Virus record (IMG/VR): IMGVR_UViG_3300020578_000006
Location: 165,718 to 229,717 of that record
Strand: one strand, 5' to 3'
DNA: 64,000 nt
Shown here: piece after piece, positions 25,533 to 59,264 of the stretch
How the letters are laid out: the number at the start of each line of letters is the position of its first letter
Numbering within the stretch: position 1 is the stretch's first letter
The notes under the pieces: generated by a model
What the model was told of the DNA's origin: nothing
What the model saw: only the letters and a program-made list of their open reading frames with translations
The model's database searches: none
Program-made: the position numbers and the translations under genes

Positions 25533-28500
25533 TTATTCTACTCTTATAAACCCACCGCTTAATGCGATGTAAGACAGTAGAACCTCCGTGCTTAATGCAT
25601 CTAATCCGATTCTTAAATGAATTGGATTTGCGGGATTATAATCCATAGAAACTAAAGGCAGATTTGAAGTACCGTCGTTTTCCAAAGCATCAGACGCTTG
25701 GAATATAACTTTAGTACTTCCACCAACATCTATTGCTGCCCCGACAAACTGCTTTACCAAAGAGCGAACATTTTTGAGAGTATTTGTTCCGCTCAATTTA
25801 ATAATATCTGTTGAGGTTTCATCAGACCAATTAGGTGGGGTAGTCTGGGTGGCTTGAACTCTGAGATGTTTAGCTACATTACTGTTTGTCATATCAAGAT
25901 ACAGCATACCTCTTAATGATCCGCCTTCTAACAATCTATTTCCTAGATCATTTGCACTTAGTGTAATATAATTACTATATTCCATTTGCACCGCGGGGGT
26001 CATAGAAGCCATGTAAGGTGTGAGTGTATATCTTAAATTACTTAAACTATTAACAGTTGTGTGAGTGCTGTCCCAATCAGCTGAAGTCTCATTTACAGAA
26101 GTATAAGTACTATCCCAATCAGCTGAAGTCTCATTTACAGAAGTATAAGTACTATCCCAGTCGGCTGAAGTCTCTGAAACCGATGTATAAGTTGAATTCC
26201 AGTCGGCTGAAGTCTCTGAAACCGATGTATAAGTTGAATTCCAGTCGGCTGAAGTCTCATTTACAGAAGTATAAGTACTATCCCAGTCGGCTGAAGTCTC
26301 ATTTACAGAAGTATAGGTACTATCCCAATCAGCTGAAGTCTCATTTACAGAAGTATAAGTACTATCCCAATCAGCTGACGTCTCTGAAACCGATGTATAA
26401 GTACTAACCCAATCAGCTGAAGTCTCACTTACAGATGTGTATGTAGCATCCCAATTAGCTGATGTTTCACTAACGGAAGTGTATGTGGCATCCCAGTTAG
26501 CAGAGGTTTCACTGACGTCTGTATATGTAGCATCCCAATTAGCTGATGTATTGCTAACGTCTGTATAGACATTGTTCCAATCAGCTGATGTTTCACTAAC
26601 GTCGGTGTATGTGGCATCCCAGTTAGCAGATACCGTGGCTATATCATTGGTTACAGAACTATATGCTTGATCCCAATCAGCTGATGTTTCACTAACGTCG
26701 GTGTATGTGGCGTCCCAGGTAGCAGAAGTGTTACTAACGTCGGTATAGACGTTGTTCCAATCTCCGCTTAACACATTTACCGTATCTCTAGAAGATTGAA
26801 GAGGTATTAATATTTCATCCACATCAGTTTTTGTGTAATATAATGAAGATACAAAATTACCGCTAACGGAGGCAAACTCTAAAACCAGTGAATCGACATA
26901 TCGTTTAGATACAAACTCATCTGCATTTGTAAAATTAGTAGACAAGGTTTGAGAAGTTGTTAACTTCCCGATCATATTGTCACCTATATCTCTTATGTAG
27001 CTATTGCTAAGCGTGTTGTAGGTTGTATAGGTACCGTTCCATTTTAAGGAGTTGTTATTAACATAATCATATGTGGCATCCCAGTTAGCAGTTACCGGGG
27101 CTATATCATTGGTTACAGAACTATAAGCTTGATCCCAGTTAGCAGTTACCGGGGCTATATCATTGGTTACAGAGCTATAAGCTTGATCCCAGTTAGCAGT
27201 TACCGGGGCTATATCATTGGTTACAGAGCTATAAGCTTGATCCCAGTTAGCACTGGTTTCGCTTACCGAGGTGTAAGTGCTGTCCCAGTCAGCCGAAGTT
27301 TCGCTTACCGATGTATAAGCTTGATCCCAGTTAGCACTGGTTTCGCTTACCGAGGTGTAAGTGCTGTCCCAGTCAGCCGAAGTTTCGCTTACCGATGTAT
27401 AAGTTGAATCCCAATTGGCGCTAGCTTCACTTACAGAAGTATAAGTACTATCCCAGTCGGCTGAAGTCTCTGAAACCGATGTATAAGTTGAATTCCAGTC
27501 GGCTGAAGTCTCACTTACAGAAGTATAAGTACTATCCCAATCAGCTGACGTCTCTGAAACCGATGTATAAGTACTATCCCAATCAGCTGAAGTCTCATTT
27601 ACAGAAGTATAAGTACTATCCCAATCAGCTGACGTCTCTGAAACCGATGTATAAGTTGAATTCCAGTCGGCTGAAGTCTCATTTACAGAAGTATAAGTAC
27701 TATCCCAATCAGCTGACGTCTCACTTACAGAAGTATAGGTACTATCCCAATCAGCTGACGTCTCACTTACAGAAGTATAGGTACTATCCCAATCAGCTGA
27801 CGTCTCACTTACAGCTGTATATGTAGCATCCCAATTAGCTGACGTCTCACTTACAGCTGTATATGTAGCATCCCAATTAGCTGACGTCTCACTTACAGCT
27901 GTATATGTAGCATCCCAATTAGCTGACGTCTCACTGACGTCTGTATATGTAGCATCCCAATTAGCTGAAGTCTCACTGACGTCTGTATATGTAGCATCCC
28001 AATTAGCTGAAGTCTCACTTACAGAAGTATAAGTACTATCCCAATCAGCTGACGTCTCACTTACAGAAGTATAGGTACTATCCCAATCAGCTGATGTTTC
28101 ACTTACCGAGGTGTAAGTACTATCCCAATTGGCGCTAGCTTCACTTACTGATGTGTAAGTGCTATCCCAACTAGCAGACGCAGTTTGTAACGGTGTTATA
28201 AAAGCTGATTCTTCCCAACTATCCGACAATGATCTTACTAGAGTTTCGACACTCCCCCAACCAGCTGAATTAGTTCTGGTTGTACTGTAAACCGAATCCC
28301 AACTAGCAGACGCGGTTTGTAACGGTGTTATAAAAGCTGATTCTTCCCAACTATCCGACAATGATCTTACTAGAGTTTCAACACTCTCCCAACCAGCTGA
28401 ATTAGTTCTGGTTGTACTGTAAACCGAATTCCAATCATTACTATTTCCGTTAAAAGCATAAACTATATTCCTGGCGCTTAAATTAGAACTAACATTTACG

Positions 28501-31500
28501 CCATTTAAAAATGATATATGTAAAGTGTTTGCCCCGGTACCAGGTGTATCGTCACTATCAGAAATTACAGCTGAATTCCCTGCAGTAGCACTATAAAGAT
28601 CTGTTACTGATAAACTTGCTAGATGGGTAAGGGCTCCTATGGTAACTTCATTGCTAGAGAGGTATTGCAAAACGGTACTTAATGCAAAATCTGGTTGCCA
28701 GTATCCGGAATTGGTTGTTGTTGTATTATAATTACTTACCCAGTTATTACTGTTTCTGCCATTTCCTGTTCCTGCTAAATCTATGCTGTTAGAAATATTT
28801 AAACCTGCACTAATAGTTACCGTTGTCGAATTAATCTCAAATAAATTTCTTCTAACTGTATCCGAAGTGCCGTTACCAACAATAAAGAGACTTGATGACG
28901 GTTGATTGTATAAACCTATAACAACCTGATTAGATCCGTTGCTAATTAATGATTCACCACCTACGGTGACAGAATTATTACCATAAACATAATTGTTTCT
29001 TCCTGCAAAATTACCAGAAAAATTACCTACTACTACACCTTGATATCCTAAGCCGTAAGAAAAATTACCGTAAGACTCTGATACACTACCTAGTACACTG
29101 TTTTTAATTGTACCTCCGCTAAGATAAGAAAAATTATCTGCACTGGTAAACCTATAGTTCTCTCTCTCAAAATAAAACCCTGCTGTACCGAATGTTGGTC
29201 TATGTACTGTGTCTTGTGAACCACCGTACAATACCCAGCCAGCATTTCCAGCTGCAGAACAAGATATTGTTATGTTTTCAAATGCATATGAATCCATTAA
29301 ATTACCTATAGTAATTTCTAGATCGTTTCCATTTTTTGCTCTTACATAAGCATCAAAATAGCCGTATCTGTAAGTATTACTGTTGGTTAAGGTGTTGTTG
29401 GGTCTATCTGGTAAAATAAATCCTGTTCCCGCAGGGGATGTGGAGGGCATTTCCCTTGGTACCCATAATGTAAGAGGGGAGCCACTCTTAAGTCCAGTTA
29501 AAACACTAGAATTAGTAAATCTAACTAAAACATGTTTAGGAATATTTTTATAATTACCTGTAAGACCTACGTAATCAGTACCTGGTGTTCCAATTTGACT
29601 TGTAATAATAGAGACACCAGGGTTCCCTCCATTTGCTCTAGACTGTAAATTGACATTTTGTCTTGTTTTTTGTGCTGGTACCCAGTTGGATTGATTACCT
29701 ATAAATAAATCAAATCTAAACGTGGAGAGCGTTGGGTTAGCAGAAACCTGAGTACACTGTGCATTATATGATGCTGCTACTATACCGGCGACCCCTGGGT
29801 TAACAGCCAGAGTGACAACCTCACCAACATTGATTAGAGAATAGTTTGTATTGGTGGTTGAGTTAACTCCAATTAATACCCCTGTCAATCTATCAGTATT
29901 TGTTAAAAGTAAAGCGTTGTTAGTGTCAACAAATCCACCCTGATTGGCAGTAATAGTTGTAGAAATTTGAAATTGAGGTAGGGTGTGTACAAAAAATCTA
30001 TTTGTATACCCGCTAGGTAGGTTATAACCATAAACATCGCTAACATTACCACCCATGGTCATTTGCCATTCTCGGGTAGCGTTAAATGGCGCGCCTACCC
30101 ACATTACGTGGGTGTGATCTGAACCCCCGGTAAAGTTATTAATACCTGCTCTAAAAGTCATTCCGTGTGTAATGGCGGCTCTTCCATCACTTACAAATGT
30201 TGTGCCTGGGTCCATGTTATCTACGTTTTGAATATGAAGTCCGTAGACACCTAGGTTAGGTAAATTCCTTACGGAAGTATCGTAAGTAGGTGATTGGCCT
30301 TTAAGTATCAAGCCGCCAGGTAATGCAAAAGTTGATTCGGAATTAAAGAAATCGTAATTTTGCCGAAGCGTTGCACTTAAGGCAGGGTAATCTGAGTTTT
30401 TAACTAGCGTTCCAATCTTAGGTGAAATTACTATTCCACCGGCGCTAATTCTATCTGTTACAGTATTGCTTAGTGTTCTTACGTCGTTTGTAGAAAGATA
30501 GTTTGTTACTGTAGGTAGTATTTCAGCACTTTCTTCCCAAGTCGTGGATAGTGCTTGTACAGTGTTCTTAACACTATCCCAACCAGCTGATATTTCTGAA
30601 ACCGATGTATATGTCGAATTCCAGTTAGCAGTTACCGGGGCTATATCATTGGTTACAGAGCTATAAGCTTGATCCCAGTTAGCAGTTACCGGGGCTATAT
30701 CATTGGTTACAGAGCTATAAGCTTGATCCCAATTAGCAGATGTATCCCTTACAGATGTGTAATTATTATCCCACTTAGCACTATTCTGACTTACTGAGGT
30801 GTATGTTCCTCCACCATCGTTCCAGCTTGCACTAACAGCAGCTACACTACCATAAACACTATCCCAGTTAGCAGAGTTGTTTCTACTAGATGTATAATTG
30901 CTGTTCCAATTAGCTGATACAGCAGCAACATCTGATATAAAACTAGATTCTTCCCAAGCATCTGAGAGTGACCTTACTGTTGTTTCGACTGATTCCCAGC
31001 CAGCTGAATTACCTTGGGTAGTACTATAAACTGAATTCCAGTTAGCAGAAGTATCTCTTACAGATGTTTCAACTGATTCCCAACCCCCACTATTACTTTG
31101 TGTGGTGCTATATACACTATTCCAGTTAGCAGATGTATCCCTTACAGATGTGTAATTATTATCCCACTTAGCACTATTCTGACTTACTGAGGTGTATGTT
31201 CCTCCACCATCGTTCCAGCTTGCACTAACAGCAGCTACACTACCATAAACACTATCCCAGTTAGCAGAGTTGTTTCTACTAGATGTATAAACTGAATCCC
31301 AATTAGCAGAATTATTTCTACTAGATGTATAATTGCTGTTCCAATTAGCTGATACAGCAGCAACATCTGATATAAAACTAGATTCTTCCCAAGCATCTGA
31401 GAGTGACCTTACTGTTGTTTCGACTGATTCCCACCCTCCACTATTATTTTGGGTAGTACTATATACACTATTCCAGTTAGCGGATGTATCCCTTACAGAT

Positions 31501-32072
31501 GTTTCTACACTCTCCCACCCTGCAGAATTACTTTGTGTAGTACTGTAGGCGGAATTCCAATTAGCAGAATTATTTCTACTAGATGTATAGGTACTATCCC
31601 AGTTAGCAGAAGTGGTTCTTGAAGATGTATAATTGCTATTCCAATTAGCTGATGCATCTCTTACAGATGTTTCAACTGATTCCCAGCCCCCACTATTGCT
31701 TTGTGTAGTGCTATATACACTATCCCATTCAGCTGAATTTGCTGAAGTTGCTGTATATGCCTGATCCCATTTTCCACTATTTTGTAAGACACTTGTATGT
31801 ACTGATTCACCTAACGTTTTTAAGAAAAATATTTCTGCTAAATCTCTGTTACCTGATAATATTTTATATAAGCTAGTAAAGGTGTCGACCGCACTTAAAC
31901 TACCAGAGACTATTAAGTCACCAGGCAAAACTATTTCAGAATTTACCGGGTAAGCTGAAGCAGGTAAAAAATAGTTGTAGCTAGAATCAATTAGATTCTT
32001 AAAATCTGCTTCTGACGGAAATTTGCCAGTCTTAAATGCAGTGTATAATTCAGCTATATTGACAATTGCCAC
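25533..32072 (-). CDS. Giant 2179-aa fibre/adhesin with Trp-containing 14-aa repeats and a YadA-head-like segment
   Basis: N-terminal FKTGKFPSEADFKNLIDS; A(N/D)WDSTYTSVSETS repeats; GN.S..G repeats ending LFIVGNGTS; AATAAATA-4-GTG. Confidence 0.8.
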   Translation of the reverse strand: MAIVNIAELYTAFKTGKFPSEADFKNLIDSSYNYFLPASAYPVNSEIVLPGDLIVSGSLSAVDTFTSLYKILSGNRDLAEIFFLKTLGESVHTSVLQNSGKWDQAYTATSANSAEWDSVYSTTQSNSGGWESVETSVRDASANWNSNYTSSRTTSANWDSTYTSSRNNSANWNSAYSTTQSNSAGWESVETSVRDTSANWNSVYSTTQNNSGGWESVETTVRSLSDAWEESSFISDVAAVSANWNSNYTSSRNNSANWDSVYTSSRNNSANWDSVYGSVAAVSASWNDGGGTYTSVSQNSAKWDNNYTSVRDTSANWNSVYSTTQSNSGGWESVETSVRDTSANWNSVYSTTQGNSAGWESVETTVRSLSDAWEESSFISDVAAVSANWNSNYTSSRNNSANWDSVYGSVAAVSASWNDGGGTYTSVSQNSAKWDNNYTSVRDTSANWDQAYSSVTNDIAPVTANWDQAYSSVTNDIAPVTANWNSTYTSVSEISAGWDSVKNTVQALSTTWEESAEILPTVTNYLSTNDVRTLSNTVTDRISAGGIVISPKIGTLVKNSDYPALSATLRQNYDFFNSESTFALPGGLILKGQSPTYDTSVRNLPNLGVYGLHIQNVDNMDPGTTFVSDGRAAITHGMTFRAGINNFTGGSDHTHVMWVGAPFNATREWQMTMGGNVSDVYGYNLPSGYTNRFFVHTLPQFQISTTITANQGGFVDTNNALLLTNTDRLTGVLIGVNSTTNTNYSLINVGEVVTLAVNPGVAGIVAASYNAQCTQVSANPTLSTFRFDLFIGNQSNWVPAQKTRQNVNLQSRANGGNPGVSIITSQIGTPGTDYVGLTGNYKNIPKHVLVRFTNSSVLTGLKSGSPLTLWVPREMPSTSPAGTGFILPDRPNNTLTNSNTYRYGYFDAYVRAKNGNDLEITIGNLMDSYAFENITISCSAAGNAGWVLYGGSQDTVHRPTFGTAGFYFERENYRFTSADNFSYLSGGTIKNSVLGSVSESYGNFSYGLGYQGVVVGNFSGNFAGRNNYVYGNNSVTVGGESLISNGSNQVVIGLYNQPSSSLFIVGNGTSDTVRRNLFEINSTTVTISAGLNISNSIDLAGTGNGRNSNNWVSNYNTTTTNSGYWQPDFALSTVLQYLSSNEVTIGALTHLASLSVTDLYSATAGNSAVISDSDDTPGTGANTLHISFLNGVNVSSNLSARNIVYAFNGNSNDWNSVYSTTRTNSAGWESVETLVRSLSDSWEESAFITPLQTASASWDSVYSTTRTNSAGWGSVETLVRSLSDSWEESAFITPLQTASASWDSTYTSVSEASANWDSTYTSVSETSADWDSTYTSVSETSADWDSTYTSVSETSANWDATYTDVSETSANWDATYTDVSETSANWDATYTAVSETSANWDATYTAVSETSANWDATYTAVSETSADWDSTYTSVSETSADWDSTYTSVSETSADWDSTYTSVNETSADWNSTYTSVSETSADWDSTYTSVNETSADWDSTYTSVSETSADWDSTYTSVSETSADWNSTYTSVSETSADWDSTYTSVSEASANWDSTYTSVSETSADWDSTYTSVSETSANWDQAYTSVSETSADWDSTYTSVSETSANWDQAYSSVTNDIAPVTANWDQAYSSVTNDIAPVTANWDQAYSSVTNDIAPVTANWDATYDYVNNNSLKWNGTYTTYNTLSNSYIRDIGDNMIGKLTTSQTLSTNFTNADEFVSKRYVDSLVLEFASVSGNFVSSLYYTKTDVDEILIPLQSSRDTVNVLSGDWNNVYTDVSNTSATWDATYTDVSETSADWDQAYSSVTNDIATVSANWDATYTDVSETSADWNNVYTDVSNTSANWDATYTDVSETSANWDATYTSVSETSANWDATYTSVSETSADWVSTYTSVSETSADWDSTYTSVNETSADWDSTYTSVNETSADWDSTYTSVNETSADWNSTYTSVSETSADWNSTYTSVSETSADWDSTYTSVNETSADWDSTYTSVNETSADWDSTHTTVNSLSNLRYTLTPYMASMTPAVQMEYSNYITLSANDLGNRLLEGGSLRGMLYLDMTNSNVAKHLRVQATQTTPPNWSDETSTDIIKLSGTNTLKNVRSLVKQFVGAAIDVGGSTKVIFQASDALENDGTSNLPLVSMDYNPANPIHLRIGLDALSTEVLLSYIALSGGFIRVE
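26060..26760 (-). repeat. 42-bp coding tandem repeats, distal block of the fibre gene
   Basis: Repeated TCCCA(A/G)TC(A/G)GCTGAAGTCTC units. Confidence 0.85.
27075..28170 (-). repeat. About 22 x 42-bp plus 3 x 54-bp coding tandem repeats
   Basis: Counted from the translation (14-mers, then ANWDQAYSSVTNDIAPVT x3). Confidence 0.9.
30600..31760 (-). repeat. Proximal repeat block of the fibre gene (14/18-aa units, nested duplications)
   Basis: SANWNSVYSTTQ and DAWEESSFISDVAAVS units repeated. Confidence 0.85.
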
Positions 32073-32086
32073 GAATTATTTATTCC

Positions 32087-32487
32087 TGGAGCTGCTGGGA
32101 TTTGAACCCAGGTCTTGAAAAGATTCACTATAAGCCACTACAAGTGTATTCTGGTTGAGATTCATAATATATTAAACCAGACAAAACATATTAAATATAA
32201 TGATTTTATACGCTTGATAGATAACCATTAAAACACATCAAGTCGAAAGCTAGTAACACGCCTTGCTCTACAAGCTTTTATCTACAGCAAGACGATCGAA
32301 CTAAACTAGTTCGAGTTCGGCTTCTGCGTCTTCGAAGCCATACTGTGCAAGAACTGCATCAGCTTCTTCTAGACTCATGGCCATGTCGAAGTTATCTTCG
32401 GCAATTGATTTGTTTGCTATTTTTAATTGGAATGCCCCAATACTTGCAACCTATACCTACACCATTCAATCGATTCCATTCAGCCCC
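32087..32487 (-). ncRNA. ssrA: tmRNA (one-piece, about 401 nt, CCA not encoded)
   Basis: 5' GGGGCTG pairs with 3' CAGCTCC-A with G3.U70; T-arm CTGGG-TTCAAAT-CCCAG; internal tag frame 32402..32301 ending in hairpin CGAACTA/TAGTTCG. Confidence 0.95.
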
Positions 32488-32518
32488 AGTTATCAAAGAA
32501 CGATTTATTATAATCTAT

Positions 32519-32743
32519 TTATTCTAAAATTCCAATACTTCTGAAAGGAAGCGGTTTTCCATTTTTATCATTAACAGTTATACCGTCAATATGGCCAGCC
32601 ATATACGAGCCATGGCCTTCCCATTTACCACAATACCAAATAGGCTTTACTTCTTTACCTTCTAGAAGTCTTCTTCTGTTAAAGGAAGTCTTATGACCAG
32701 GTGTTCTGCTTCCTGCTTGGGGATTTGTTTTTGAGGCTGCCAT
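32519..32743 (-). CDS. Hypothetical protein
   Basis: 74-aa ORF. Confidence 0.5.
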   Translation of the reverse strand: MAASKTNPQAGSRTPGHKTSFNRRRLLEGKEVKPIWYCGKWEGHGSYMAGHIDGITVNDKNGKPLPFRSIGILE

Positions 32744-41927: not shown

Positions 41928-42581
41928 TTACTTTCTCTTTTTAAGAAGTAGTAGTGCGCTAACACCTAACAATGATAGGATTGAAGGTTCGGGTACAGCA
42001 GTAAATTGTGTTAAGTAATTTACTCCCCCGTTGCTTGCATAGTTTTCAAAACTACCACTGCTTCCACCGTTAGACCATGTAAAGTCAGCCTTTGCATACA
42101 TTTCTATTGTGTATGTTTTAGGTGCTTGAATGGTACCAGCGGTTACGTTCTGTAATAAGTTAACAGAAGAATTGGCTGCCCAATATTTGTTAACGTTACC
42201 ATCAGTCCATGAGTTACTAAACGGAACGTTATATGAACTGAATGCACCTTTATCAGCTGCACCAGTTTCATACACCCTCCAGTATAAAGTAACTGCATTA
42301 GCAGAATCTGTAGAACTTTGCCAGGTTTTAGCAGTTGCACTAGCTAATTGTAGTAACCCACCTTGATTCATGTTAATAGTACCAAGGCTAGCAGGTAAAG
42401 AATTAGCAGGGTTTGGACCATGGGTATCACCAAGCAAATTATAGAACGTAGTTGCTTGATTAATCACATCCAAACTAGAAGCATCTACACTAAACCCAAC
42501 ACCTACTGCATACATAGTATTGGCATAAGATGCTGATGCTAACCCTAAACTTATTACAATAGCTAGAATTAATTTATTCAT
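41928..42581 (-). CDS. PEP-CTERM sorting-domain protein
   Basis: Signal peptide plus VPEPS-ILSLLGVSALLLL-KKRK. Confidence 0.9.
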   Translation of the reverse strand: MNKLILAIVISLGLASASYANTMYAVGVGFSVDASSLDVINQATTFYNLLGDTHGPNPANSLPASLGTINMNQGGLLQLASATAKTWQSSTDSANAVTLYWRVYETGAADKGAFSSYNVPFSNSWTDGNVNKYWAANSSVNLLQNVTAGTIQAPKTYTIEMYAKADFTWSNGGSSGSFENYASNGGVNYLTQFTAVPEPSILSLLGVSALLLLKKRK

Positions 42582-44146
42582 ACATTACCCTCCTTTCTTT
42601 TGAGCGTTCTTATTGCAAGTACCCCTAGTCCTCCAAGCAGCATTAAGCTACCAGCAGAGGGTTCAGGAATACCTGAAACTTCAATGTTATTAACAAACAG
42701 ACCATAGTTTGGTTGATCTGCTGTAGTGGTCTGTATGTCACCTGCATAGAAGTGAATAGTAGTAATATAATCCGGCACATTTACATTAGTCACAAATAAC
42801 ACCTCTGGATTTCCGTATAAATAAGCACTTACTTCAACAAGTGTAGGGGTTAATTGCTCTACCATGTAAGTTAATGCTTGTTGATAGCCATTGGCTAACA
42901 CCTGAGTATTAGTTAATCCAGTACCTGCAAAGGTAATAGGATCTGACCATACATTCTGGAATCTAAACACTGCAGTGTTTCCAGACATGAATTCAACACC
43001 TCGGTTACCTCCATTCCAAAGATAGTTTGCATCTACTGATAGAGTTTGACCTGCTATAAGGCCACCACCATTGAGTACAAACCAACCGTTTGAGTATTGA
43101 TTATAAGCCGTATTACCAGGTACAAAATTAAATGCACTTGCTCCAATACTAGTTCTTCCTCCTTGAGAGGAATTACTAATCTGGGTTATAGCAGATGTGT
43201 CATTTTGGAAGTACCAAGTACCTACACTTGTACCAGCACCTTCTATCCATGTTGCAGTGGTATAGCTGCTGGCATCCTCTATACCTAATACAGCTGCATG
43301 TGTTGTATTTAGACTAAAGATAGCGAGCAATGCAGCAAGCAAGCTAACTTTAGTTTTGTTTTTTGTTCTCATAAAACCTAATAATGTTGCGCCTATTACA
43401 AGCAATAACCAAGTATCTGGTTCAGGAATAATACCTACATCAGAGAGCGAATCACCCACAGATAGATAATCAATATGCACAACAGGTGCTGCAGTTGCAG
43501 AACCTTGTCTTAAGTTAATAGCAGATATAAAAGAAGCTGGCTCTGAACCTGTAGTAGATAGCCAATTAACTGTTCCTAGTTCTGCTACAAGTAATGATCT
43601 GTTTGTATCATTAGGGTTTATGTACAAGCTAAATGTATCATTAAGAGTGCCAGCTACAAAATCCCATGCCATAACTATAGTGTATTCAGTGTTAAAATCT
43701 AATAATGTAGTTCCCCAGGTCATTGCAGATCCTGTGCCTGATGCAGATTGTAATCCCAGTTGAAATCCAGCACCTGAGCTTCTAGCAGCCAATCTTTGAT
43801 AAAAATTGGAAGAAGTACCTGCAGGGTCAGATAGGTTTAAGAAGTAATCACCATTAACAAAGGCAGATGCAATTTTAAGATCTACTCTTGTATATAAAGT
43901 ATTACCAGACGTCTTTACTACTTGTGAAGTTAGTGCTTTCCAAACATCTTGACCTGTTGTATTAATAATTGCTTTACCATCTTGGTACTGAATAGGATTA
44001 TTAGAAGCAGTGGATGTTTGAGTCCATCCATTCTGCCCTACTAGATTTCCATTTACATATCCTGTTGAAAAGTCATCAATTAGATATGTTGCTGCATTGA
44101 GATTTATAGCTACCAATGCAAGTAGTGTTGTTATTAGTTTTTTCAT
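42578..44146 (-). CDS. Tandem double PEP-CTERM protein
   Basis: Signal; internal IPEPDTWLLLVIGATLLGFMRTK; second signal; terminal IPEPSAGSLMLLGGLGVLAIRTLKRK. Confidence 0.85.
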   Translation of the reverse strand: MKKLITTLLALVAINLNAATYLIDDFSTGYVNGNLVGQNGWTQTSTASNNPIQYQDGKAIINTTGQDVWKALTSQVVKTSGNTLYTRVDLKIASAFVNGDYFLNLSDPAGTSSNFYQRLAARSSGAGFQLGLQSASGTGSAMTWGTTLLDFNTEYTIVMAWDFVAGTLNDTFSLYINPNDTNRSLLVAELGTVNWLSTTGSEPASFISAINLRQGSATAAPVVHIDYLSVGDSLSDVGIIPEPDTWLLLVIGATLLGFMRTKNKTKVSLLAALLAIFSLNTTHAAVLGIEDASSYTTATWIEGAGTSVGTWYFQNDTSAITQISNSSQGGRTSIGASAFNFVPGNTAYNQYSNGWFVLNGGGLIAGQTLSVDANYLWNGGNRGVEFMSGNTAVFRFQNVWSDPITFAGTGLTNTQVLANGYQQALTYMVEQLTPTLVEVSAYLYGNPEVLFVTNVNVPDYITTIHFYAGDIQTTTADQPNYGLFVNNIEVSGIPEPSAGSLMLLGGLGVLAIRTLKRKEGNV

Positions 44147-44793
44147 AATCTTTTTCTTAATGCTAGTAATCCTAGTAATGTTAAATGTAAGGTTGAAGGT
44201 TCAGGAACTACTTCAATTATTTCATTACCTCCGTTATAAGAAAATGTACCTACCAATGCTGTAGTATTAGAAGAGAAGACAAACGATTCCATATTAGGTG
44301 TGCTATCAAACAGAGGGGCGCGCCATAAAGTATCAGTTAAAATAGCTTTATCGTAAGAACTGTTATAAGGTGCAGCTGTAAAATTAACTAGGTCTGCATC
44401 ATATATAGCTAATGCAAGTTGTGTATTTACCGCAACATCAGTATTATCTATTTTGCTATAATTGATTTGCATCTCAAGAAAATCTACTCCCGTATCAACA
44501 AAACCTGTACCGTTAGGAAGAGGGGAGAAAATACCATTACTATAAGTACCCCATAACGCTGACATGTAACGGGTATTAACTGTATTATTATCTACAAGAA
44601 CAGAAAATAAATCGTCATACAAAACTATAGAAGAAACAGCTTTGGATTCGGACACCATAAACCAACCAATAAAAAAGCCGCACATTGTGCGGCTTAGCAT
44701 CTTTAAAGCGTTATAAGCGCTCTTGTATCCTAGCATGTGAGGTTCTCCCTCATATAATGTACTTATACCTGCTGTTGTATTGTTTGCAAGCAT
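44143..44793 (-). CDS. PEP-CTERM sorting-domain protein
   Basis: VVPEPSTLHLTLLGLLALRKRL; true start may be a later Met. Confidence 0.85.
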   Translation of the reverse strand: MLANNTTAGISTLYEGEPHMLGYKSAYNALKMLSRTMCGFFIGWFMVSESKAVSSIVLYDDLFSVLVDNNTVNTRYMSALWGTYSNGIFSPLPNGTGFVDTGVDFLEMQINYSKIDNTDVAVNTQLALAIYDADLVNFTAAPYNSSYDKAILTDTLWRAPLFDSTPNMESFVFSSNTTALVGTFSYNGGNEIIEVVPEPSTLHLTLLGLLALRKRL

Positions 44794-45364: not shown

Positions 45365-46042
45365 ATGGGCAACATATGGAATACACTCATTGATGTGCAG
45401 CATATGCTGCAAAAGCAGTTTGAGATCAGTGGCAAGGAAATACAAGAACCAGGCATGGATCGGTTCAATCAACCGGGGTGGATAAACCGGGTATGGACAT
45501 CTGATAATTATCGCAGAGCTCATATTGATGTAGTTGACACCCGTGACATCAAGGGACTATGGATGATGCATTGCTGCATCTTTCCGCATGTACACAATGA
45601 TGCACCCATATTTGGGTTTGATGTGATTGCCGGTAAGAATATTATTACAGGTTGTTTTCATGATTACAGTGTGACTGTGAACAAGGACCATGACATGTGC
45701 ACTTGGTTTGCTCAATATGTGAAACAATTTTCATGGCGCAAAATCAGAGAATTACCCGCATGGGCCAATCGTATATTTTCTCCAAGCATGGTGGCTGCCA
45801 GCCAAGTCACATGTGAAACAGAATTGCAGCAAATCTCTCAAATGGTAACAGACACTTCTGCATATTATTTGCAACATATAGGAGCATCCAATCACAAGGA
45901 TGTAAACACTACTGCAGCTCAAAATTATTATGCTGCCAATCAGAAGGAAAATCCTCACACTCCCCGGGTTATGGCTAAACTGGGTCTTAAGGAAGATGAC
46001 ATTAAAGTCTTTATTCAAAATTGCTTGTTTCCTGAGATATGA
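45365..46042 (+). CDS. pcyX: Ferredoxin-dependent bilin reductase, PcyX/PcyA type
   Basis: YRRAHID55, WMMH69CCIFP, PIFGFD86, QNYY..NQKENPHT. Confidence 0.85.
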   Translation: MGNIWNTLIDVQHMLQKQFEISGKEIQEPGMDRFNQPGWINRVWTSDNYRRAHIDVVDTRDIKGLWMMHCCIFPHVHNDAPIFGFDVIAGKNIITGCFHDYSVTVNKDHDMCTWFAQYVKQFSWRKIRELPAWANRIFSPSMVAASQVTCETELQQISQMVTDTSAYYLQHIGASNHKDVNTTAAQNYYAANQKENPHTPRVMAKLGLKEDDIKVFIQNCLFPEI

Positions 46043-53923: not shown

Positions 53924-54127
53924 CTAAAAAGGTCGTTGGTTCAAGTAAGGATGCCACCCATCCAACCGATCTTCAGTCCTCACATCAGCAAAGTCAATGT
54001 ACAATCCCCCATAATACTCATCATCATGTTTGTAGGCCACGTTACAGTCTTTCTGGTAATCGTTTAACTGATTGATACGCTCTGCTAGCTCTCTGTATGT
54101 CATTTGACAGCTCCTTGTGCCAAGCAC
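53924..54127 (-). CDS. Early hypothetical protein
   Basis: MTYRELAERI..L segment; probable later start. Confidence 0.5.
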   Translation of the reverse strand: MLGTRSCQMTYRELAERINQLNDYQKDCNVAYKHDDEYYGGLYIDFADVRTEDRLDGWHPYLNQRPF

Positions 54128-54387
54128 TCTTCAATAGTGGGCTCTTGCCAGTACAAGGTGTTGAAGCCCATGATCCAGACATTCACACCTGGCTTCTTGA
54201 TGCCTCTCATCACCACATCCCCTGCAGGGTGTTGTGCACATGCATCAGTCACAACTTCGATGAATCCTTCTCTGACAGATCCCTGCACATCATATCCCAC
54301 CTTCTTGGCTTCTGTCAAGTAGGGCTTGAGCACTTGGGTGGTCATCAGTTTGGGGAAGAATTTGTGTTTCTGTTGTGTATTCATCAT
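54100..54387 (-). CDS. Early hypothetical protein
   Basis: Promoter module followed by ATGATG. Confidence 0.55.
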   Translation of the reverse strand: MMNTQQKHKFFPKLMTTQVLKPYLTEAKKVGYDVQGSVREGFIEVVTDACAQHPAGDVVMRGIKKPGVNVWIMGFNTLYWQEPTIEECLAQGAVK

Positions 54388-54428
54388 GTCTATATTATGG
54401 CTGAACTGGGGTTTGAGTCAACTACAAT

Positions 54429-54689
54429 TTACTCCGCCCTCACCCACCTAATACCCTTAACTTCATCATCATATCGGGTTTGCACCTCATCCATCATGTT
54501 CTCGGTTTTCACCAACACCACCAACCGCTCCAACTTTGCATCAATATCTTCAATCGTTTTCTTAATAAACTTCCATTTACGGGAATCGATTTTAGCTTCA
54601 TTGCTCACATATTTGAGACCATTCTCCAAGTTCTCAATCATGTAATGGAGATACATACTACGATTATCGCGCTCGGTTTCATTTATCAT
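54429..54689 (-). CDS. Early hypothetical protein
   Basis: Promoter module. Confidence 0.55.
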   Translation of the reverse strand: MINETERDNRSMYLHYMIENLENGLKYVSNEAKIDSRKWKFIKKTIEDIDAKLERLVVLVKTENMMDEVQTRYDDEVKGIRWVRAE

Positions 54690-54724
54690 ACCCATATTAT
54701 GAATGAAATTGAGTTTAGTTCAAC

Positions 54725-55033
54725 TCAAAAATCATCACTATCAACATCATTATTCAACAAATCGTTGATCTTGATAGACTTGATATCGAAGGGTTTAGCG
54801 TTTTTCAGGGCTTCTTTCATTTCCTTTAACCCCTTCTCACTCAATATAACGGTAGAGCTAAAATCTCCCTCTCCATCATTATACAATGTAACTCCTTGAC
54901 TATCAGTATTATAGGAATTGTAATAACCAATCTCCTCTAATACCTTTTCCTCGGTCAAGGAATCCAGCCAGGCCTCTCCACCACACTCCACATCAATCTT
55001 CAACACCGCATATTTTTGTTCTTTTTTCATCAT
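54725..55033 (-). CDS. Early hypothetical protein
   Basis: Promoter module followed by ATGATG. Confidence 0.55.
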   Translation of the reverse strand: MMKKEQKYAVLKIDVECGGEAWLDSLTEEKVLEEIGYYNSYNTDSQGVTLYNDGEGDFSSTVILSEKGLKEMKEALKNAKPFDIKSIKINDLLNNDVDSDDF

Positions 55034-55052
55034 ACTCCTATTATACGGGAAT

Positions 55053-55373
55053 TTACTTTTTCTTCAACTCCAAATTTCTATACTCTTTACTCATTCCCCA
55101 CACATTACCATCTCCATACCAACTCGCACTATCCACCAACTCCCATCCACTATCAATCTTATTAACTTCTTTCAATATATTCCTCCACACCTTCTCAAAC
55201 TTATAACTCCCAAAACTCTTCCACACAATCTTATATCCATTACACAACTCATTATTATATCTATTACAATTATACCGCACCATCTCCTTACCCCTATTAT
55301 CACTAATCTTATTAACCTCTTCAATAAACAACTCTCTAACTTTTTTATTAAACTCTCTATTACTAATTTTCAT
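55053..55373 (-). CDS. Early hypothetical protein, almost C-free coding strand
   Basis: Promoter module; only 2 G on plus strand in 321 nt. Confidence 0.6.
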   Translation of the reverse strand: MKISNREFNKKVRELFIEEVNKISDNRGKEMVRYNCNRYNNELCNGYKIVWKSFGSYKFEKVWRNILKEVNKIDSGWELVDSASWYGDGNVWGMSKEYRNLELKKK

Positions 55374-55408
55374 TTTATTATTATACGGGAAATTTGGATT
55401 TGGTCAAG

Positions 55409-55609
55409 TTAGATTTGGATTGATCCATCCTTTTCAATTTTGTAACAATTACCTGCATCTTCTAGAACTCTTGTATACACCTCTCCTTCAAATATTGAGC
55501 AGATAATTTCTTGACCATCCACTCCTTCAATTATATTACCAACTACTAGTTCGTCTTGTTCTATTTTATTCATACAAATCCACCCAATATATCCATTTAA
55601 CAATTTCAA
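55409..55609 (-). CDS. Early hypothetical protein
   Basis: ORF in array; start uncertain. Confidence 0.4.
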   Translation of the reverse strand: MKLLNGYIGWICMNKIEQDELVVGNIIEGVDGQEIICSIFEGEVYTRVLEDAGNCYKIEKDGSIQI

Positions 55610-55645
55610 TTACTTTATTTAACATACAACTATTCTATTTGAAAT

Positions 55646-55834
55646 TTACTTCTTCTTCAATACAATTACATCATTCTCACAAATACAAATTGTAGGACCA
55701 TTTTTAATTTCTACATTATACAAACTACCATCAAAAACAGCATTAAAAATTGTATCTTTTTTATACAATTCTGTTTTGATATATCCTTTATAGTAACAAT
55801 CCAATTTTGTATCTTTCTTTAATTTAATTAACAT
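55646..55834 (-). CDS. Early hypothetical protein
   Basis: Promoter module. Confidence 0.5.
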   Translation of the reverse strand: MLIKLKKDTKLDCYYKGYIKTELYKKDTIFNAVFDGSLYNVEIKNGPTICICENDVIVLKKK

Positions 55835-55891
55835 ACAACTATTATATCTGAATTTGCATTTTGTTCAATTCAAAAACAATCTATTTTGTTA

Positions 55892-55952
55892 TTGACAGAA
55901 TCTGCATTTCACATATACTATATGTACCACCTTGAATTACGGCAGGAGGGGG
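55892..55952 (+). promoter_or_regulatory. Antisense-oriented promoter element, copy 1
   Basis: TTGACA-16-TATACT then ATATGTACCACCTT..ATTACGGCAGGAGGGGG. Confidence 0.7.
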
Positions 55953-56039
55953 GAGAACTGTACTGCATGTTTTTCTATAAAAACAAGCACTATACATTAC
56001 TTTACTGCTTGTTATTCTGATAATTATTCAAATATACTC

Positions 56040-56276
56040 TTATAATATCCCACTATCAAAAAGGTATTGTCCTCTATTATAATAGGTAGTTAAGTACTCA
56101 CTTCCACTTTTCAGATAGATTTTAGTAGTGATGGAATCATCATCTGTACACCATCCATAATTCATATGGAAGTTCTTGTCCAGAAAGATGCCCTTACCAT
56201 ACACCTTTTTAAGATGTGATGAATGTTTGTCAGCCAATTTGGAGTAGTTCAATTTTATTTGTTCTCCTTCAACCAA
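56040..56276 (-). CDS. Early hypothetical protein
   Basis: ORF in array. Confidence 0.45.
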   Translation of the reverse strand: MVEGEQIKLNYSKLADKHSSHLKKVYGKGIFLDKNFHMNYGWCTDDDSITTKIYLKSGSEYLTTYYNRGQYLFDSGIL

Positions 56277-56548
56277 CTAACTTTATCCAACTTCTTGTTA
56301 GTAAAGTCAATCAACATACTCTCTTCACCCTTATAGATGGTGTGAGTGGGAGTTCTCTGAATGCTATCAAAATTGTCTTTCCAATTGTAGTATTCTCTCT
56401 CTCCATTTGTATATTCATAATAATAACCCTTACTATCTTTACCATCATATTCATCTCCAACTGTAAAGAGAAGAAATTCCTTCTCACTAATCCATTTGGA
56501 TTTTCCATTATACAAGTCAATTGTTAGATACTGTTTGTTTTTCATCAT
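56255..56548 (-). CDS. Early hypothetical protein
   Basis: Promoter module followed by ATGATG. Confidence 0.55.
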   Translation of the reverse strand: MMKNKQYLTIDLYNGKSKWISEKEFLLFTVGDEYDGKDSKGYYYEYTNGEREYYNWKDNFDSIQRTPTHTIYKGEESMLIDFTNKKLDKVSWLKENK

Positions 56549-56579
56549 ACAACTATAATAGCTGAATTTGGATATTGAG

Positions 56580-56810
56580 TCAACTCAAATAAGAGATGTT
56601 TCTAGATTTGATATCATCTAGAATGTCTTGTTTAAAAACTTCTAGAGAAGAATCAATAAGCTCTCTTAATGCTTGCTTCCTTCTGGTAATGGGGTAGTCA
56701 TGCAATAGATCCAACTGATCATCTGCCCACCTCTTTACAAGTTCAGTATAGAAGGAGAGTACATCAGTTTGGTTGTATGGTTTGAATTTATTAATCAGGT
56801 GTGGCATCAT
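56580..56810 (-). CDS. Early protein paralogous to the N-terminal domain of 2846..3730
   Basis: Visible alignment; promoter module. Confidence 0.6.
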   Translation of the reverse strand: MMPHLINKFKPYNQTDVLSFYTELVKRWADDQLDLLHDYPITRRKQALRELIDSSLEVFKQDILDDIKSRNISYLS

Positions 56811-56852
56811 ACTCTTATTGTAGGGGAATGTTGGGTTGAAGTCAACTATAAT

Positions 56853-56904
56853 GTATCAGATATATCAGATGTTTGCATGCAGAGTATCAGATATATCAGA
56901 TGTT
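56853..56904. repeat. Two 21-bp direct repeats GTATCAGATATATCAGATGTT, 31-bp period
   Basis: Exact copies at 56853 and 56884. Confidence 0.85.
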
Positions 56905-57055
56905 AGGTATTAAGAATCTTAACAATCTTATTGAGGGTAATTGTGGGTGAGGGGTCATCTTCCTCTTTTTCTACACCATCCAATTGACCAAACTGTAACA
57001 GATCCTCTAACTCCTCAATAATCTTCTTTCTCTTTTTAGGTGTAAGCTTAATCAT
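56903..57055 (-). CDS. Early hypothetical protein (50 aa, not in ORF track)
   Basis: MIKLTPKKRKKIIEELEDLL...KILNT; overlaps previous stop. Confidence 0.45.
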   Translation of the reverse strand: MIKLTPKKRKKIIEELEDLLQFGQLDGVEKEEDDPSPTITLNKIVKILNT

Positions 57056-57251
57056 CTTCTGCCTCTTCAGTTCCAGTCACTTCAATCTCTACATCACCAT
57101 CATCATAAGCCTTTTGAACAGTATCAAAATCGATACTGTCTTCAGCTTTCTTGTTGGCCTCTTCTTCATTTTTTGCAGTTACAGTTTTTCTGATGAAGAG
57201 GGCTACCAACACATCCACATCAAACTTCTTCTTTTTAGTAGTCTTACTCAT
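57048..57251 (-). CDS. Early hypothetical protein
   Basis: TVTAKNEEEA..KA motif. Confidence 0.5.
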   Translation of the reverse strand: MSKTTKKKKFDVDVLVALFIRKTVTAKNEEEANKKAEDSIDFDTVQKAYDDGDVEIEVTGTEEAEDD

Positions 57252-57499: not shown

Positions 57500-57529
57500 C
57501 CTCCTATTATATTAGAAATTTGGATTTAG

Positions 57530-57781: not shown

Positions 57782-57807
57782 GCCTATATTATATGGGAAG
57801 TTAGAAT

Positions 57808-57990: not shown

Positions 57991-57997
57991 TTTTATA

Positions 57998-59262: not shown

Positions 59263-59264
59263 GT

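What the first reader, a model, noticed from the sequence alone, without database searches (positions are those of the whole stretch)
32301..32402. tmRNA tag is 33 aa long and ends ELELV, not the Ala-Ala degron
Seen: after the resume-like context AAATCAATT-GCC the frame reads AEDNFDMAMSLEEADAVLAQYGFEDAEAELELV-stop (an in-frame GCA 5 codons earlier is an alternative resume site). It is strongly acidic and helix-like. Known: typical tags are about 10 aa and end in (L/A)AA, which ClpX recognises, and acidic substitutions block degradation. Inference: the phage tmRNA may free ribosomes while sparing or re-routing tagged proteins, or compete with host tagging. This could be an undescribed way of rewiring trans-translation.
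Basis: partly seen in the sequence, partly recalled or inferred. Interest (0 to 1): 0.78.

Follow-up and report, generated by a model that had tools for sequence, protein, structure and literature searches.

The report
Phage tmRNA with long conserved tag
A large lake-water phage carries its own ribosome-rescue RNA (tmRNA) whose 33-residue acidic tag ends in Leu-Val rather than Ala-Ala, and the tag contains a conserved helix shared by many phage tmRNAs that I found described in no paper.

Summary
A full-length tmRNA lies on the minus strand at 32087-32487 (Rfam 87 bits). It resumes at GCC 32402-32400, encodes AEDNFDMAMSLEEADAVLAQYGFEDAEAELELV and stops at UAG 32303-32301.

The tag is translated and selected as a peptide. 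In 18 distinct relatives from viral contigs it is always 33 aa and ends ELV. Pooled dN/dS is 0.15 in that frame and above 1 in the other two sense frames. The rest of the RNA diverges more and shows 32 compensatory base pairs.

The tag belongs to a wide class. At least 53 distinct phage tmRNA tags of about 29-35 aa share an internal module, (D/G)MA(M/P)S(L/V)xEADA(I/V)LAxxG(F/Y). Outside this clade half end in canonical LAA/MAA/VAA. The ELV end looks derived. Mycobacteriophage Bxz1 (…EEAAALV) is a distant cultured precedent.

So the claim "not the Ala-Ala degron" holds for this clade. The claim that tagged proteins are spared or re-routed is untested. The AA-ending relatives suggest the class is still degradative, with the internal helix acting as an added recognition site for an unknown reader.

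The host is unknown, with a weak lead to Verrucomicrobiota. ARAGORN misses most of these genes. I rate it a new variant of a known kind, of moderate to high interest.

The parts
32087..32487 (-). tmRNA (ssrA) gene, 401 nt from G1 (32487) to the discriminator A (32087). CCA is not encoded; the next bases are GGA.
   Evidence: RF00023 match at 87.1 bits, E 2e-32, covering model positions 1-374. In 18 homologues, 90 pairs are predicted and 32 show compensatory changes.
32481..32487 (-). 5' strand of the acceptor stem, GGGGCUG. G3 forms the G:U pair that is the AlaRS identity element.
   Evidence: The G3:U pair is GU in 18 of 18 sequences, while positions 5 and 6 change with compensation (GGGGCUG/CAGCUCC, GGGGGCG/CGCCUCC, GGGGGUG/CACCUCC).
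32426..32441 (-). Hairpin in the pseudoknot-1 region, with an invariant GGC in its loop.
   Evidence: Pairs 48-63 to 52-59 of alignment A4 include 9 UA-to-CG double changes. The second PK1 stem is not convincingly paired; non-canonical pairs are flagged.
32406..32406 (-). Invariant A four nucleotides upstream of the resume codon, the counterpart of E. coli A86.
   Evidence: Listed as invariant A82 in alignment A4. Its role in frame setting is described in PMC2481249.
32400..32402 (-). Resume codon GCC (Ala).
   Evidence: The Rfam alignment places the model's resume codon here. ARAGORN calls the same codon in L015 and L017.
32304..32402 (-). Tag reading frame of 33 codons, encoding AEDNFDMAMSLEEADAVLAQYGFEDAEAELELV.
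   Evidence: dN/dS is 0.15, against 1.2 and 1.8 in the other sense frames. Variable columns by codon position number 9, 5 and 19.
32343..32372 (-). Codons 11-20 (LEEADAVLAQ), the conserved helical core of the module shared by the wider class of phage tmRNA tags.
   Evidence: AlphaFold2 predicts a helix at residues 11-20 with pLDDT about 85. The class alignments are A5 and A6. Distinct tags carrying the module number 53.
32301..32303 (-). Stop codon UAG; most relatives have UAA.
32296..32314 (-). Helix 5, UCGAAC / GUUCGA around the loop UAGUUUA. It contains the last codons and the stop codon.
   Evidence: Compensatory variants are UCGAGC/GCUCGA, UCGAGU/ACUCGA and UUGAGC/GCUCAA.
32095..32111 (-). 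T-arm of the tRNA-like domain, CUGGG-UUCAAAU-CCCAG.
   Evidence: Three of its five pairs show double changes in 5 to 8 sequences.
32507..32535 (-). Promoter-like site, TTGGAA-17-TATAAT, ending 20 nt upstream of the mature 5' end.
   Evidence: It matches 10 of 12 consensus positions, but the number of such sites in the region is not above shuffled controls. This is a weak lead.
32519..32743 (-). A 74-aa ORF directly upstream, conserved (76-100% identity) next to the tmRNA in this phage clade. It matches no known family.
   Evidence: One relative (L014) has this ORF but no tmRNA beside it.

Best explanation
This is a working phage-encoded tmRNA. Shown: it has every sequence and structure hallmark of tmRNA, including the G3:U pair for charging with alanine, an invariant A at -4 before the resume codon, and a stop codon in helix 5. 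Shown: the 33-codon frame evolves as a protein. Inferred: during infection it is charged by the host AlaRS and, with SmpB, enters stalled ribosomes. It then adds Ala plus the 33 residues to truncated proteins and releases the ribosome. The tag appears to have three parts. The first is a short N-terminal stretch (AEDNF) that resembles ordinary tags. The second is an internal amphipathic helix followed by a G(F/Y) turn. This module is conserved across many phage tmRNAs from contigs of 34-59% GC, and I take it to be a docking site for a reader (adaptor, protease or other partner) that is still unidentified. The third is a flexible hydrophobic C-terminal end. In most of the class that end is the canonical (L/M/V)AA degron, so the class is most likely degradative. 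In this clade the end has changed to ELV, a state that looks derived. Judged by E. coli ClpX rules, this should weaken or alter recognition and shift control of the tagged protein's fate towards whatever reads the internal module.
For: The tmRNA identity and structure rest. The G:U pair is kept in 18 of 18 sequences despite compensatory changes beside it. The frame rests. Peptide-level selection is shown by dN/dS of 0.15 overall, 0.16 in codons never used for retrieval, and 0.09 in the four genes found through the neighbouring protein. The tag averages 87.5% pairwise identity against 74.7% for the rest of the RNA. None of the pairs RNAalifold predicts inside the ORF (alignment columns 88-173) has a compensatory change, while helix 5 and the non-coding helices have many. 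The wider class is supported by three searches. A profile search of 1.84 billion proteins returned 24 hits, nearly all tiny mis-called ORFs over tag frames. A core-motif scan of IMG/VR gave 70 loci. All 16 of the 16 loci tested hold a full-length tmRNA of 73-150 bits, most with tRNA genes in the same locus. Five of seven further contigs were confirmed. There are 53 distinct tags with the module. Of these, 21 end ELV and 16 end AA, and nearly all others end in small hydrophobic residues. In a tmRNA tree the ELV clade is one long-stemmed branch among AA-ending lineages. AlphaFold2 predicts a helix at residues 11-20 and a flexible tail. Short contigs of relatives in freshwater metatranscriptomes lie only inside the gene.
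Against: No experiment or expression data exist for this exact gene. The RNA-library contigs are from relatives and could in principle be DNA carry-over. No SmpB, Clp or Lon gene and no conserved candidate reader was found near the tmRNA. The window's ORFs of 120 aa or more show no SmpB domain, and no neighbour gene is shared across the class. The module matches no Pfam family, no solved structure and no Atlas cluster, so its role as a docking site is inference from conservation alone. The tree is midpoint-rooted and no support values were shown, so 'derived' is provisional. Part of the sample was retrieved with patterns taken from the tag itself, which inflates the apparent invariance of those segments. 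This was controlled. CCA is not encoded and PK1 is atypical.
Confidence: 0.55

Rival explanations
1. The tag is an ordinary degradation tag with a different sequence. The hydrophobic C-terminal Leu-Val is read by the host's ClpXP, ClpAP, FtsH or Tsp much as LAA is. The long acidic body only tunes rate or adaptor use, so the outcome (rescue plus rapid proteolysis) is the same as for the host tag.
For: Half of the class members outside this clade keep an AA end with the same module. V-terminal ends arose repeatedly: AALV, VALV and AVLV in L055, L057 and L075, and AAALV in Bxz1 and GMA2. All tags end in a hydrophobic residue and the tail is predicted flexible. From general knowledge, engineered ssrA variants ending in V (AAV, ASV) are still degraded in E. 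coli, only more slowly.
Against: Two Glu residues sit among the last five, and the -3 residue is Glu where E. coli ClpX needs Leu. The ELV end is invariant in 21 distinct tags, which suggests selection for this particular end. That end is also partly constrained by helix 5. Twenty conserved internal residues are far more than an ordinary degron needs.
Confidence: 0.3
2. The tag has lost degron function, so the phage tmRNA frees ribosomes while leaving tagged proteins intact, or competes with host tagging to keep ClpXP free or to spare phage proteins.
For: The end is not AA. The tag carries 11 acidic residues and no basic ones. The ELV clade is a distinct, long-stemmed and strictly conserved branch. 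From general knowledge, acidic C-terminal substitutions (LDD) block ClpXP.
Against: If the only requirement were 'not a degron', the sequence would be free to drift. Instead 23 of 33 positions are invariant and dN/dS is 0.15. Relatives with the same module keep LAA. The last two residues are hydrophobic, not acidic.
Confidence: 0.15
3. The tmRNA acts as a decoy that titrates SmpB or blocks host trans-translation, as proposed for the TLD-only tmRNA of mycobacteriophage DS6A. The reading frame would then be irrelevant.
For: Phage DS6A carries a TLD-only tmRNA. A similar TLD-only molecule strongly inhibited tmRNA, perhaps by titrating SmpB.
Against: This gene is full length. It has a conserved resume context, an open frame in all relatives, codon-periodic substitution, and a stop codon held in helix 5.
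Confidence: 0.03
4. The conservation reflects RNA structure, or an independently initiated small ORF starting at Met7 or Met9, and not trans-translation.
For: RNAalifold can draw pairs inside the ORF. AUG codons sit at codons 7 and 9, and gene callers have called 27-aa ORFs from them.
Against: The pairs drawn inside the ORF have no compensatory change. Substitutions concentrate at third codon positions. Codons 1-6, upstream of the AUGs, are the most constrained part, with dN/dS 0.014 over codons 1-9 and synonymous changes present. There is no in-frame start upstream. The antisense frames contain stops.
Confidence: 0.02

Closest known systems
Canonical bacterial tmRNA / ssrA (Rfam RF00023; E. 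coli tag ANDENYALAA)
   Same: It shares the tRNA-like domain with the G3:U pair, the T-arm, helix 2, the resume codon with A at -4, the stop codon in helix 5 and the downstream pseudoknot-type helices. The N-terminal AEDNF resembles the A-N-D-x-N-(Y/F) start of many tags.
   Different: The tag is 33 aa against a mode of 10. It has 11 acidic residues and ends ELV, not (L/V)AA. It contains a 20-residue conserved internal module. CCA is not encoded, PK1 is atypical, and the gene sits in a phage genome.
tmRNAs of mycobacteriophage Bxz1 (cluster C) and Gordonia phage GMA2
   Same: Both are phage-borne. ARAGORN calls the Bxz1 tag as ATDTDATVTDAEIEAFFAEEAAALV, 25 aa, which is long, acidic and ends LV. 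The GMA2 tag frame, which I read by eye, ends ...TEADFAEIEAFANSEAAALV. The N-terminus ATxTDA and the AALV end recur in class members such as L055.
   Different: They match the module only loosely, at 24% identity in A5. They are shorter and come from GC-rich actinobacteriophages. I found no study of their tag function.
Cellulophaga phage Calle_1 tmRNA
   Same: It is phage-borne with a 22-aa tag, AQIEANMEAVNAILNLEVAVGV, which is not AA-ended and carries an E-A-x-N-A-I-L stretch like EADAIL. It groups near the ELV clade in the tmRNA tree.
   Different: Its tag is shorter, has 3 acidic residues and ends VGV. Homology of the module is uncertain.
Phage tmRNAs with host-like tags (Streptomyces BE-cluster phages, Stenotrophomonas Yut2, Pseudomonas FBPa45, Alcaligenes QDWS595)
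   Same: All are phage-encoded tmRNAs, often next to tRNA arrays.
   Different: Their tags are 9-13 aa and mostly AA-ended, for example ANSNVASAYALAA, ANSNFALAA, AANDDSYTVRIAA, ANDTSFDVRLAA and ANDNVYAAAA. Several are permuted two-piece forms.
Mesoplasma florum ssrA tag and its Lon protease
   Same: It is a long tag whose recognition has moved from ClpXP to another protease. This is the established example that tag evolution can re-route proteolysis (Lon-degron pair cited in PMC10695633).
   Different: There is no sequence similarity. That case is a bacterial lineage lacking ClpXP, not a phage. No protease partner is known here.
TLD-only tmRNA of mycobacteriophage DS6A
   Same: It is a phage-borne derivative of tmRNA thought to interfere with host trans-translation.
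   Different: DS6A has no tag frame. The gene here is full length with a selected frame.

Membership tests
tmRNA (RF00023, one-piece) | Full-length match to the covariance model above the curated threshold | tested here: met
   The match scores 87.1 bits against a gathering score of 47 and covers model positions 1-374. Relatives score 84-107 bits.
tmRNA (RF00023, one-piece) | Acceptor stem with a G3:U pair (alanine identity) and a T-arm | tested here: met
   The pair at columns 4-408 is GU in 18 of 18 sequences. The T-arm has compensatory changes at three of its five pairs.
tmRNA (RF00023, one-piece) | Resume codon for a small residue, set by a conserved A four nucleotides upstream | tested here: met
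   The resume codon is GCC, and the A at -4 is invariant. The rule comes from PMC2481249.
tmRNA (RF00023, one-piece) | Short open frame without a start codon, ending at a stop in or next to helix 5 | tested here: met
   The frame has 33 codons. The UAG overlaps the 3' strand of helix 5, which shows compensatory variants.
tmRNA (RF00023, one-piece) | Pseudoknots PK1-PK4 | tested here: inconclusive
   Nested helices downstream of the ORF are well supported by covariation. The PK1 second stem is flagged as non-canonical. Pseudoknot pairings were not scored separately.
tmRNA (RF00023, one-piece) | Encoded or added 3' CCA, charging by AlaRS, binding of SmpB, tagging activity | not testable with these tools
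   CCA is not encoded; the sequence reads ...CUCCA then GGA. No SmpB domain was found among the window's ORFs of 120 aa or more. The rest of the roughly 230-kb genome was not available.
Canonical ssrA degradation tag (ClpX-type) | C-terminal hydrophobic tripeptide ending Ala-Ala | tested here: not met
   The tag ends E-L-V, as do all 21 distinct tags of the clade.
Canonical ssrA degradation tag (ClpX-type) | Rapid degradation of tagged proteins by ClpXP, ClpAP, Lon or FtsH | not testable with these tools
   This needs reporter stability assays.
Phage long-tag tmRNA class (defined here) | Tag of about 29-35 aa with the internal module (D/G)MA(M/P)S(L/V)xEADA(I/V)LAxxG(F/Y), carried by a full-length tmRNA on a viral contig | tested here: met
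   The class alignments are A5 and A6. There are 53 distinct tags. All 16 loci tested and 5 of 7 hold a full-length tmRNA. The contexts are phage-like.
Host-derived tag (same as the host's own ssrA tag) | Identity or near-identity of the phage tag to the host tag | tested here: inconclusive
   The host is unknown. The PEP-CTERM protein points weakly to Verrucomicrobiota. The pattern for EDNFDMAM occurs in no tmRNA of 185,579 representative genomes, and its 3 hits all lie inside Acidobacteriota proteins. Host tags of similar length but different sequence are not excluded.

The most novel reading that the evidence does not exclude
Many phages carry a tmRNA whose tag contains a dedicated, portable docking helix read by a partner that is not yet known, either phage-encoded or a universally conserved host factor. 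Infected cells would then mark every truncated protein with a phage-specific label. In the ELV clade the ClpX-type degron has been dropped altogether, so the label would decide the protein's fate on its own, through an alternative protease, sequestration or recycling. That would be a phage-controlled branch of trans-translation rather than a mere spare copy of the host system.
Probability: 0.3. Interest if true: 0.8.

Novelty: new variant of a known kind. Interest (0 to 1): 0.62.

Why it matters
Phage tmRNAs are usually listed in genome papers as spare parts, and I found no study of their tags. This analysis shows that a whole class of them encodes a much longer tag with a strictly conserved internal helix. 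One clade has also replaced the Ala-Ala degron. The selection on the peptide means it does something sequence-specific in infected cells.

Three consequences follow. First, there is a concrete, cheap experiment: reporter stability and pull-down with the tag and with the module scrambled. It could reveal a new adaptor or protease route, or a way phages manage stalled ribosomes and proteolysis during infection. Second, the class could supply orthogonal degradation or affinity tags for synthetic biology, as the Mesoplasma tag and its Lon protease did. Third, there is an annotation problem. ARAGORN, the standard tool in phage pipelines, found the right gene and tag in only 2 of the 15 Rfam-confirmed genes checked here. 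Phage tmRNAs of this kind are therefore probably under-counted.

Tried and rejected
- **Stop-codon recoding.** If the phage read UAG as sense, the tag would be longer. Per-frame counts of stop types show no recoded region, and most relatives use UAA.
- **Alternative resume at the upstream GCA.** It is out of frame in several relatives.
- **Similarity of the tag to a known domain.** I found nothing usable in Pfam at E up to 10, in PDB sequences searched with two profiles (best E 0.024 to a P450, a helix plus GY turn), or in the ESM Atlas. By eye the module resembles the Mpa-binding helix of Pup and the first helices of UBA domains. No search supported either, and the topology (a free C-terminus) is the reverse of Pup, so I dropped both.
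- **The tag in cultured phages.** tblastn of three tags against 50,697 phage records gave nothing relevant. blastn of the tmRNA gave only a 28-nt match.
- **A conserved neighbouring gene as candidate reader.** No gene is shared across the class within 5 kb. The 74-aa upstream ORF is specific to this clade and has no known family.
- **Supplementary tables.** Those of the huge-phage and tmRNA-database papers contain no tag lists.
- **Chance matches to EDNFDMAM.** The pattern also hit a large phage protein (L031, L037) and Acidobacteriota proteins (L047-L049). These are chance matches.
- **The 54-64 kb stretch with no long ORFs.** It is simply a dense array of small minus-strand genes.
- **Host identification from the DUF6267-family protein (5558-6919).** It shows only distant (25-28%) relatives in T4-like cyanophages and in myophages of Pelagibacter and Methylophilales.

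Full report
**1. What is at the coordinates**

The finding lies on the minus strand. Read 5'->3', the RNA begins GGGGCUGAAUGG... at 32487 and ends ...CAGCUCCA at 32087. Rfam's tmRNA model matches 32084-32487 over its full length at 87.1 bits, E 2e-32, and is the only Rfam family found in the window. The model's resume codon aligns with GCC at 32402-32400.

ARAGORN reports nothing in the window. It does call a tmRNA with the same resume point and a 33-aa tag in two relatives, L015 and L017.

**2. The window is phage DNA**

- The ORFs include PhoH, GTP cyclohydrolase I with QueD- and QueE-like genes, an M15 endolysin, tail-fibre proteins, homing endonucleases, a ferredoxin and a ferredoxin-dependent bilin reductase, UvdE, a 5'-3' exonuclease and an S8 protease.
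- The same sequence occurs in IMG/VR contigs of up to 229.7 kb and in more than twenty lake-water metagenome runs.
- A DUF6267-family protein (5558-6919) has only distant relatives, at 25-28% identity, in T4-like cyanophages and in myophages of Pelagibacter and Methylophilales.
- The host is unknown. Two phage proteins carry PEP-CTERM sorting signals. The nearest Atlas clusters of one of them are from Verrucomicrobiota, with score 0.97. This is a lead, not an identification.

**3. The tmRNA is a constrained, structured RNA**

I collected 18 distinct homologous genes from viral contigs. They were found first through the neighbouring 74-aa protein and then through degenerate patterns for the C- and N-terminal parts of the tag.

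- RNAalifold on their alignment predicts 90 pairs, and 32 of them have compensatory double changes.
- The acceptor stem changes at positions 5 and 6 with compensation while the G3:U pair stays GU in all 18. That pair is the alanine identity element.
- The T-arm, helix 2, helix 5 and three downstream helices all covary.
- The A four nucleotides before GCC is invariant. In E. coli the equivalent A86 sets the frame four nucleotides downstream (PMC2481249).
- CCA is not encoded, so it must be added after transcription. The second stem of PK1 is not convincing.

**4. The tag is translated and selected as a peptide**

- All 18 genes encode 33 residues. There are 14 distinct peptides and 23 invariant positions.
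- Variable columns fall 9, 5 and 19 on codon positions 1, 2 and 3. The tag averages 87.5% pairwise identity, against 74.7% for the rest of the RNA.
- Pooled Nei-Gojobori dN/dS is 0.15 in the tag frame, against 1.23 and 1.78 in the other two sense frames. It is the only frame free of stops in all 18.
- Some sequences were retrieved with patterns taken from the tag, so I repeated the test. dN/dS is 0.16 for codons 10-25, which were never in a retrieval pattern. It is 0.09 for the four genes found only through the neighbouring protein.
- Codons 1-9, upstream of the internal AUGs, are the most constrained (dN/dS 0.014). Translation therefore starts at or before them, and there is no start codon upstream.
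- The pairs RNAalifold draws inside the ORF show no compensatory change. RNA structure does not explain the conservation, except at the last codons, which form helix 5.

**5. Expression**

Freshwater metatranscriptome assemblies hold short contigs (105-305 nt) that are 80-95% like this gene. They lie only between 32087 and 32448, with nothing in the flanks. This fits a stable small RNA made by relatives. It is not proof, because DNA carry-over is possible and the flanks are less conserved.

**6. The tag belongs to a much larger class**

- A profile of the tag, searched against 1.84 billion representative proteins, gave 24 hits. Nearly all are ORFs of 25-103 aa that gene callers placed over the tag frames of other tmRNAs.
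- Their contigs look like phage. They carry a tail collar domain, HNH, an SNF2 helicase with 35-40% identity to helicases of Thermus, Rhodothermus, Microcystis and Ruegeria phages, a sigma factor, DUF1064 and arrays of small ORFs. Rfam confirms full-length tmRNAs on five of the seven contigs scanned.
- A degenerate DNA pattern for the core (EADA[IV]LA..G[FY]) found 70 IMG/VR loci. About 45 are tag frames. All 16 loci tested contain a full-length tmRNA of 73-150 bits, most with tRNA genes in the same locus.
- The contigs range from 34 to 59% GC and up to about 200 kb, so many different hosts are implied.
- The tags are about 29-35 aa, taking the likely resume codons. They share a start like ordinary tags (AN.N..., AND...), the module (D/G)MA(M/P)S(L/V)xEADA(I/V)LAxxG(F/Y)x(D/E)..., and a short hydrophobic end.
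- Among 53 distinct tags, 21 end ELV (this clade, which is over-sampled) and 16 end AA (LAA 10, MAA 3, VAA 2, AAA 1). Others end ALV, VLV, AVA, VLA or ALA.
- In a FastTree of 45 tmRNAs the ELV clade is a single long-stemmed branch among AA-ending lineages. The tree is midpoint-rooted and no support values were shown, so 'derived' is provisional.

**7. Comparison with cultured phages**

A blastn search with the 3' part of the Rfam consensus, followed by ARAGORN and Rfam on selected hits, gave the following.

| Phage or group | Tag | Source |
|---|---|---|
| Streptomyces BE-cluster phages | ANSNVASAYALAA, ANSKFAFALAA, ANSNFALAA | |
| Stenotrophomonas Yut2 | AANDDSYTVRIAA | |
| Pseudomonas FBPa45 | ANDTSFDVRLAA | |
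| Alcaligenes QDWS595 | ANDNVYAAAA | |
| Xanthomonas BUDD | AANDADYSVARYA | |
| Mycobacteriophage GenevaB15 | AADVAADYAAVGA | |
| Mycobacteriophage Bxz1 | ATDTDATVTDAEIEAFFAEEAAALV | |
| Gordonia phage GMA2 (frame read by eye) | ...TEADFAEIEAFANSEAAALV | |
| Cellulophaga phage Calle_1 | AQIEANMEAVNAILNLEVAVGV | |

Host-like tags dominate the first group. Long tags that do not end in AA therefore already sit in databases, but the module class itself was not found in any cultured phage.

I found no paper that analyses phage tmRNA tags, and none that contains these tag strings. The huge-phage survey only notes that tmRNAs and SmpB occur in phages, and it used ARAGORN. Reviews give a tag length range of 8-35 aa with a mode of 10.

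**8. Is the tag the host's?**

This could not be tested directly. The degenerate pattern for EDNFDMAM occurs three times in 185,579 species-representative genomes. All three hits lie inside Acidobacteriota protein genes, with no tmRNA nearby. Host tags of similar length but different sequence are not excluded.

**9. What the peptide looks like**

- It has 11 acidic and no basic residues.
- AlphaFold2, run with two alignments, gives one helix at residues 11-20 (pLDDT about 85), a possible short helix at residues 4-7, and a flexible last third.
- No domain or structure match was found.

**10. Interpretation**

- *Shown:* a full-length, covarying tmRNA with alanine identity; a frame set by the canonical A at -4; a 33-residue peptide under purifying selection; membership of a broad phage class with a conserved internal helix; an ELV end specific to one clade.
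- *Inferred:* the tmRNA rescues ribosomes in infected cells and tags truncated proteins. The internal helix is a docking site for an unknown reader. Because half of the class outside this clade keeps an AA end, the class is probably degradative. The ELV clade has changed the entry signal, which by E. coli ClpX rules should weaken ClpX recognition.
- *Not shown:* whether tagged proteins are degraded more slowly, degraded by another protease, or kept.
- No SmpB, Clp or Lon gene was seen in the window, and no neighbour gene is shared across the class.

**11. Verdict**

I rate it a new variant of a known kind. What is new is the conserved module across phage tmRNAs and the clade-specific loss of the Ala-Ala end. 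It can be tested directly with reporter and pull-down experiments.

Noticed in passing
window 32087-32487; L013, L016, L018, L020, L021, L024, L026, L050-L058: ARAGORN misses this tmRNA and most of its relatives. In the ELV clade it found 2 of the 10 genes it was run on. Among five Rfam-confirmed tmRNAs on further contigs it found none correctly and gave one wrong tag (GQQQSESCR in L058). Rfam finds all of these. Phage surveys that rely on ARAGORN probably under-count this class.
   Followed up: partly
window 44143-44793 (-) and 42578-44146 (-): Two phage ORFs carry PEP-CTERM sorting motifs. The nearest Atlas clusters of the first are from Verrucomicrobiota (score 0.97). A phage encoding exosortase substrates is unusual and hints at the host.
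   Followed up: partly
window 45365-46042 (+): This ORF is a ferredoxin-dependent bilin reductase. A ferredoxin and a QueD/QueE/GTP-cyclohydrolase set also lie elsewhere in the window. These are cyanophage-style auxiliary genes in a phage whose host may not be a cyanobacterium.
   Followed up: no
window 25533-32072 (-): A 2179-aa ORF lies directly downstream of the tmRNA. It has no PHROG match and only a weak DUF948 stretch. It is followed by a 417-aa ORF and an 813-aa S8 subtilase-like protein. Its function is unknown.
   Followed up: no
window 54000-64000: This stretch has almost no ORF of 120 aa or more and a strong negative GC skew (down to -0.39). It is a dense run of minus-strand ORFs of 50-120 aa, like an early-gene block. 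There is no sign of stop-codon recoding.
   Followed up: yes
L063, L082, L085, L086, L087, L093, L098, L107: Large phage proteins of 475-2509 aa contain a conserved stretch, NPEADAMLALWGYGGKLQ(S/T)MEAY. It matches the core pattern of the tag module (EADA.LA..GY). Whether this is chance or a related interaction motif is open.
   Followed up: no
L046 942-998 (Gordonia phage GMA2); L061 2145-2212; L094 2882-2950: Pistol ribozymes lie in the same loci as the tmRNA and tRNA genes of three unrelated phages. abiF RNA motifs occur in L079 and L094.
   Followed up: no
L044 887-963 (Alcaligenes phage vB_Af_QDWS595): ARAGORN calls a tRNA with anticodon UUA (a suppressor of UAA) directly beside this phage's permuted tmRNA.
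   Followed up: no
L014 4200-5000: A relative (84% identity in the 74-aa ORF) has no tmRNA next to that ORF. Either the gene has been lost or it lies elsewhere in that genome. Comparing genomes with and without it could help find partner genes.
   Followed up: no
window 32426-32441 and 32400-32403: The invariant loop GGCA of the PK1-region hairpin is complementary to U-GCC, the resume codon plus the base before it. The invariant AAUAGCA lies 15 nt upstream of the resume codon and resembles the E. coli upstream element, but at the wrong distance. Neither is explained.
   Followed up: no
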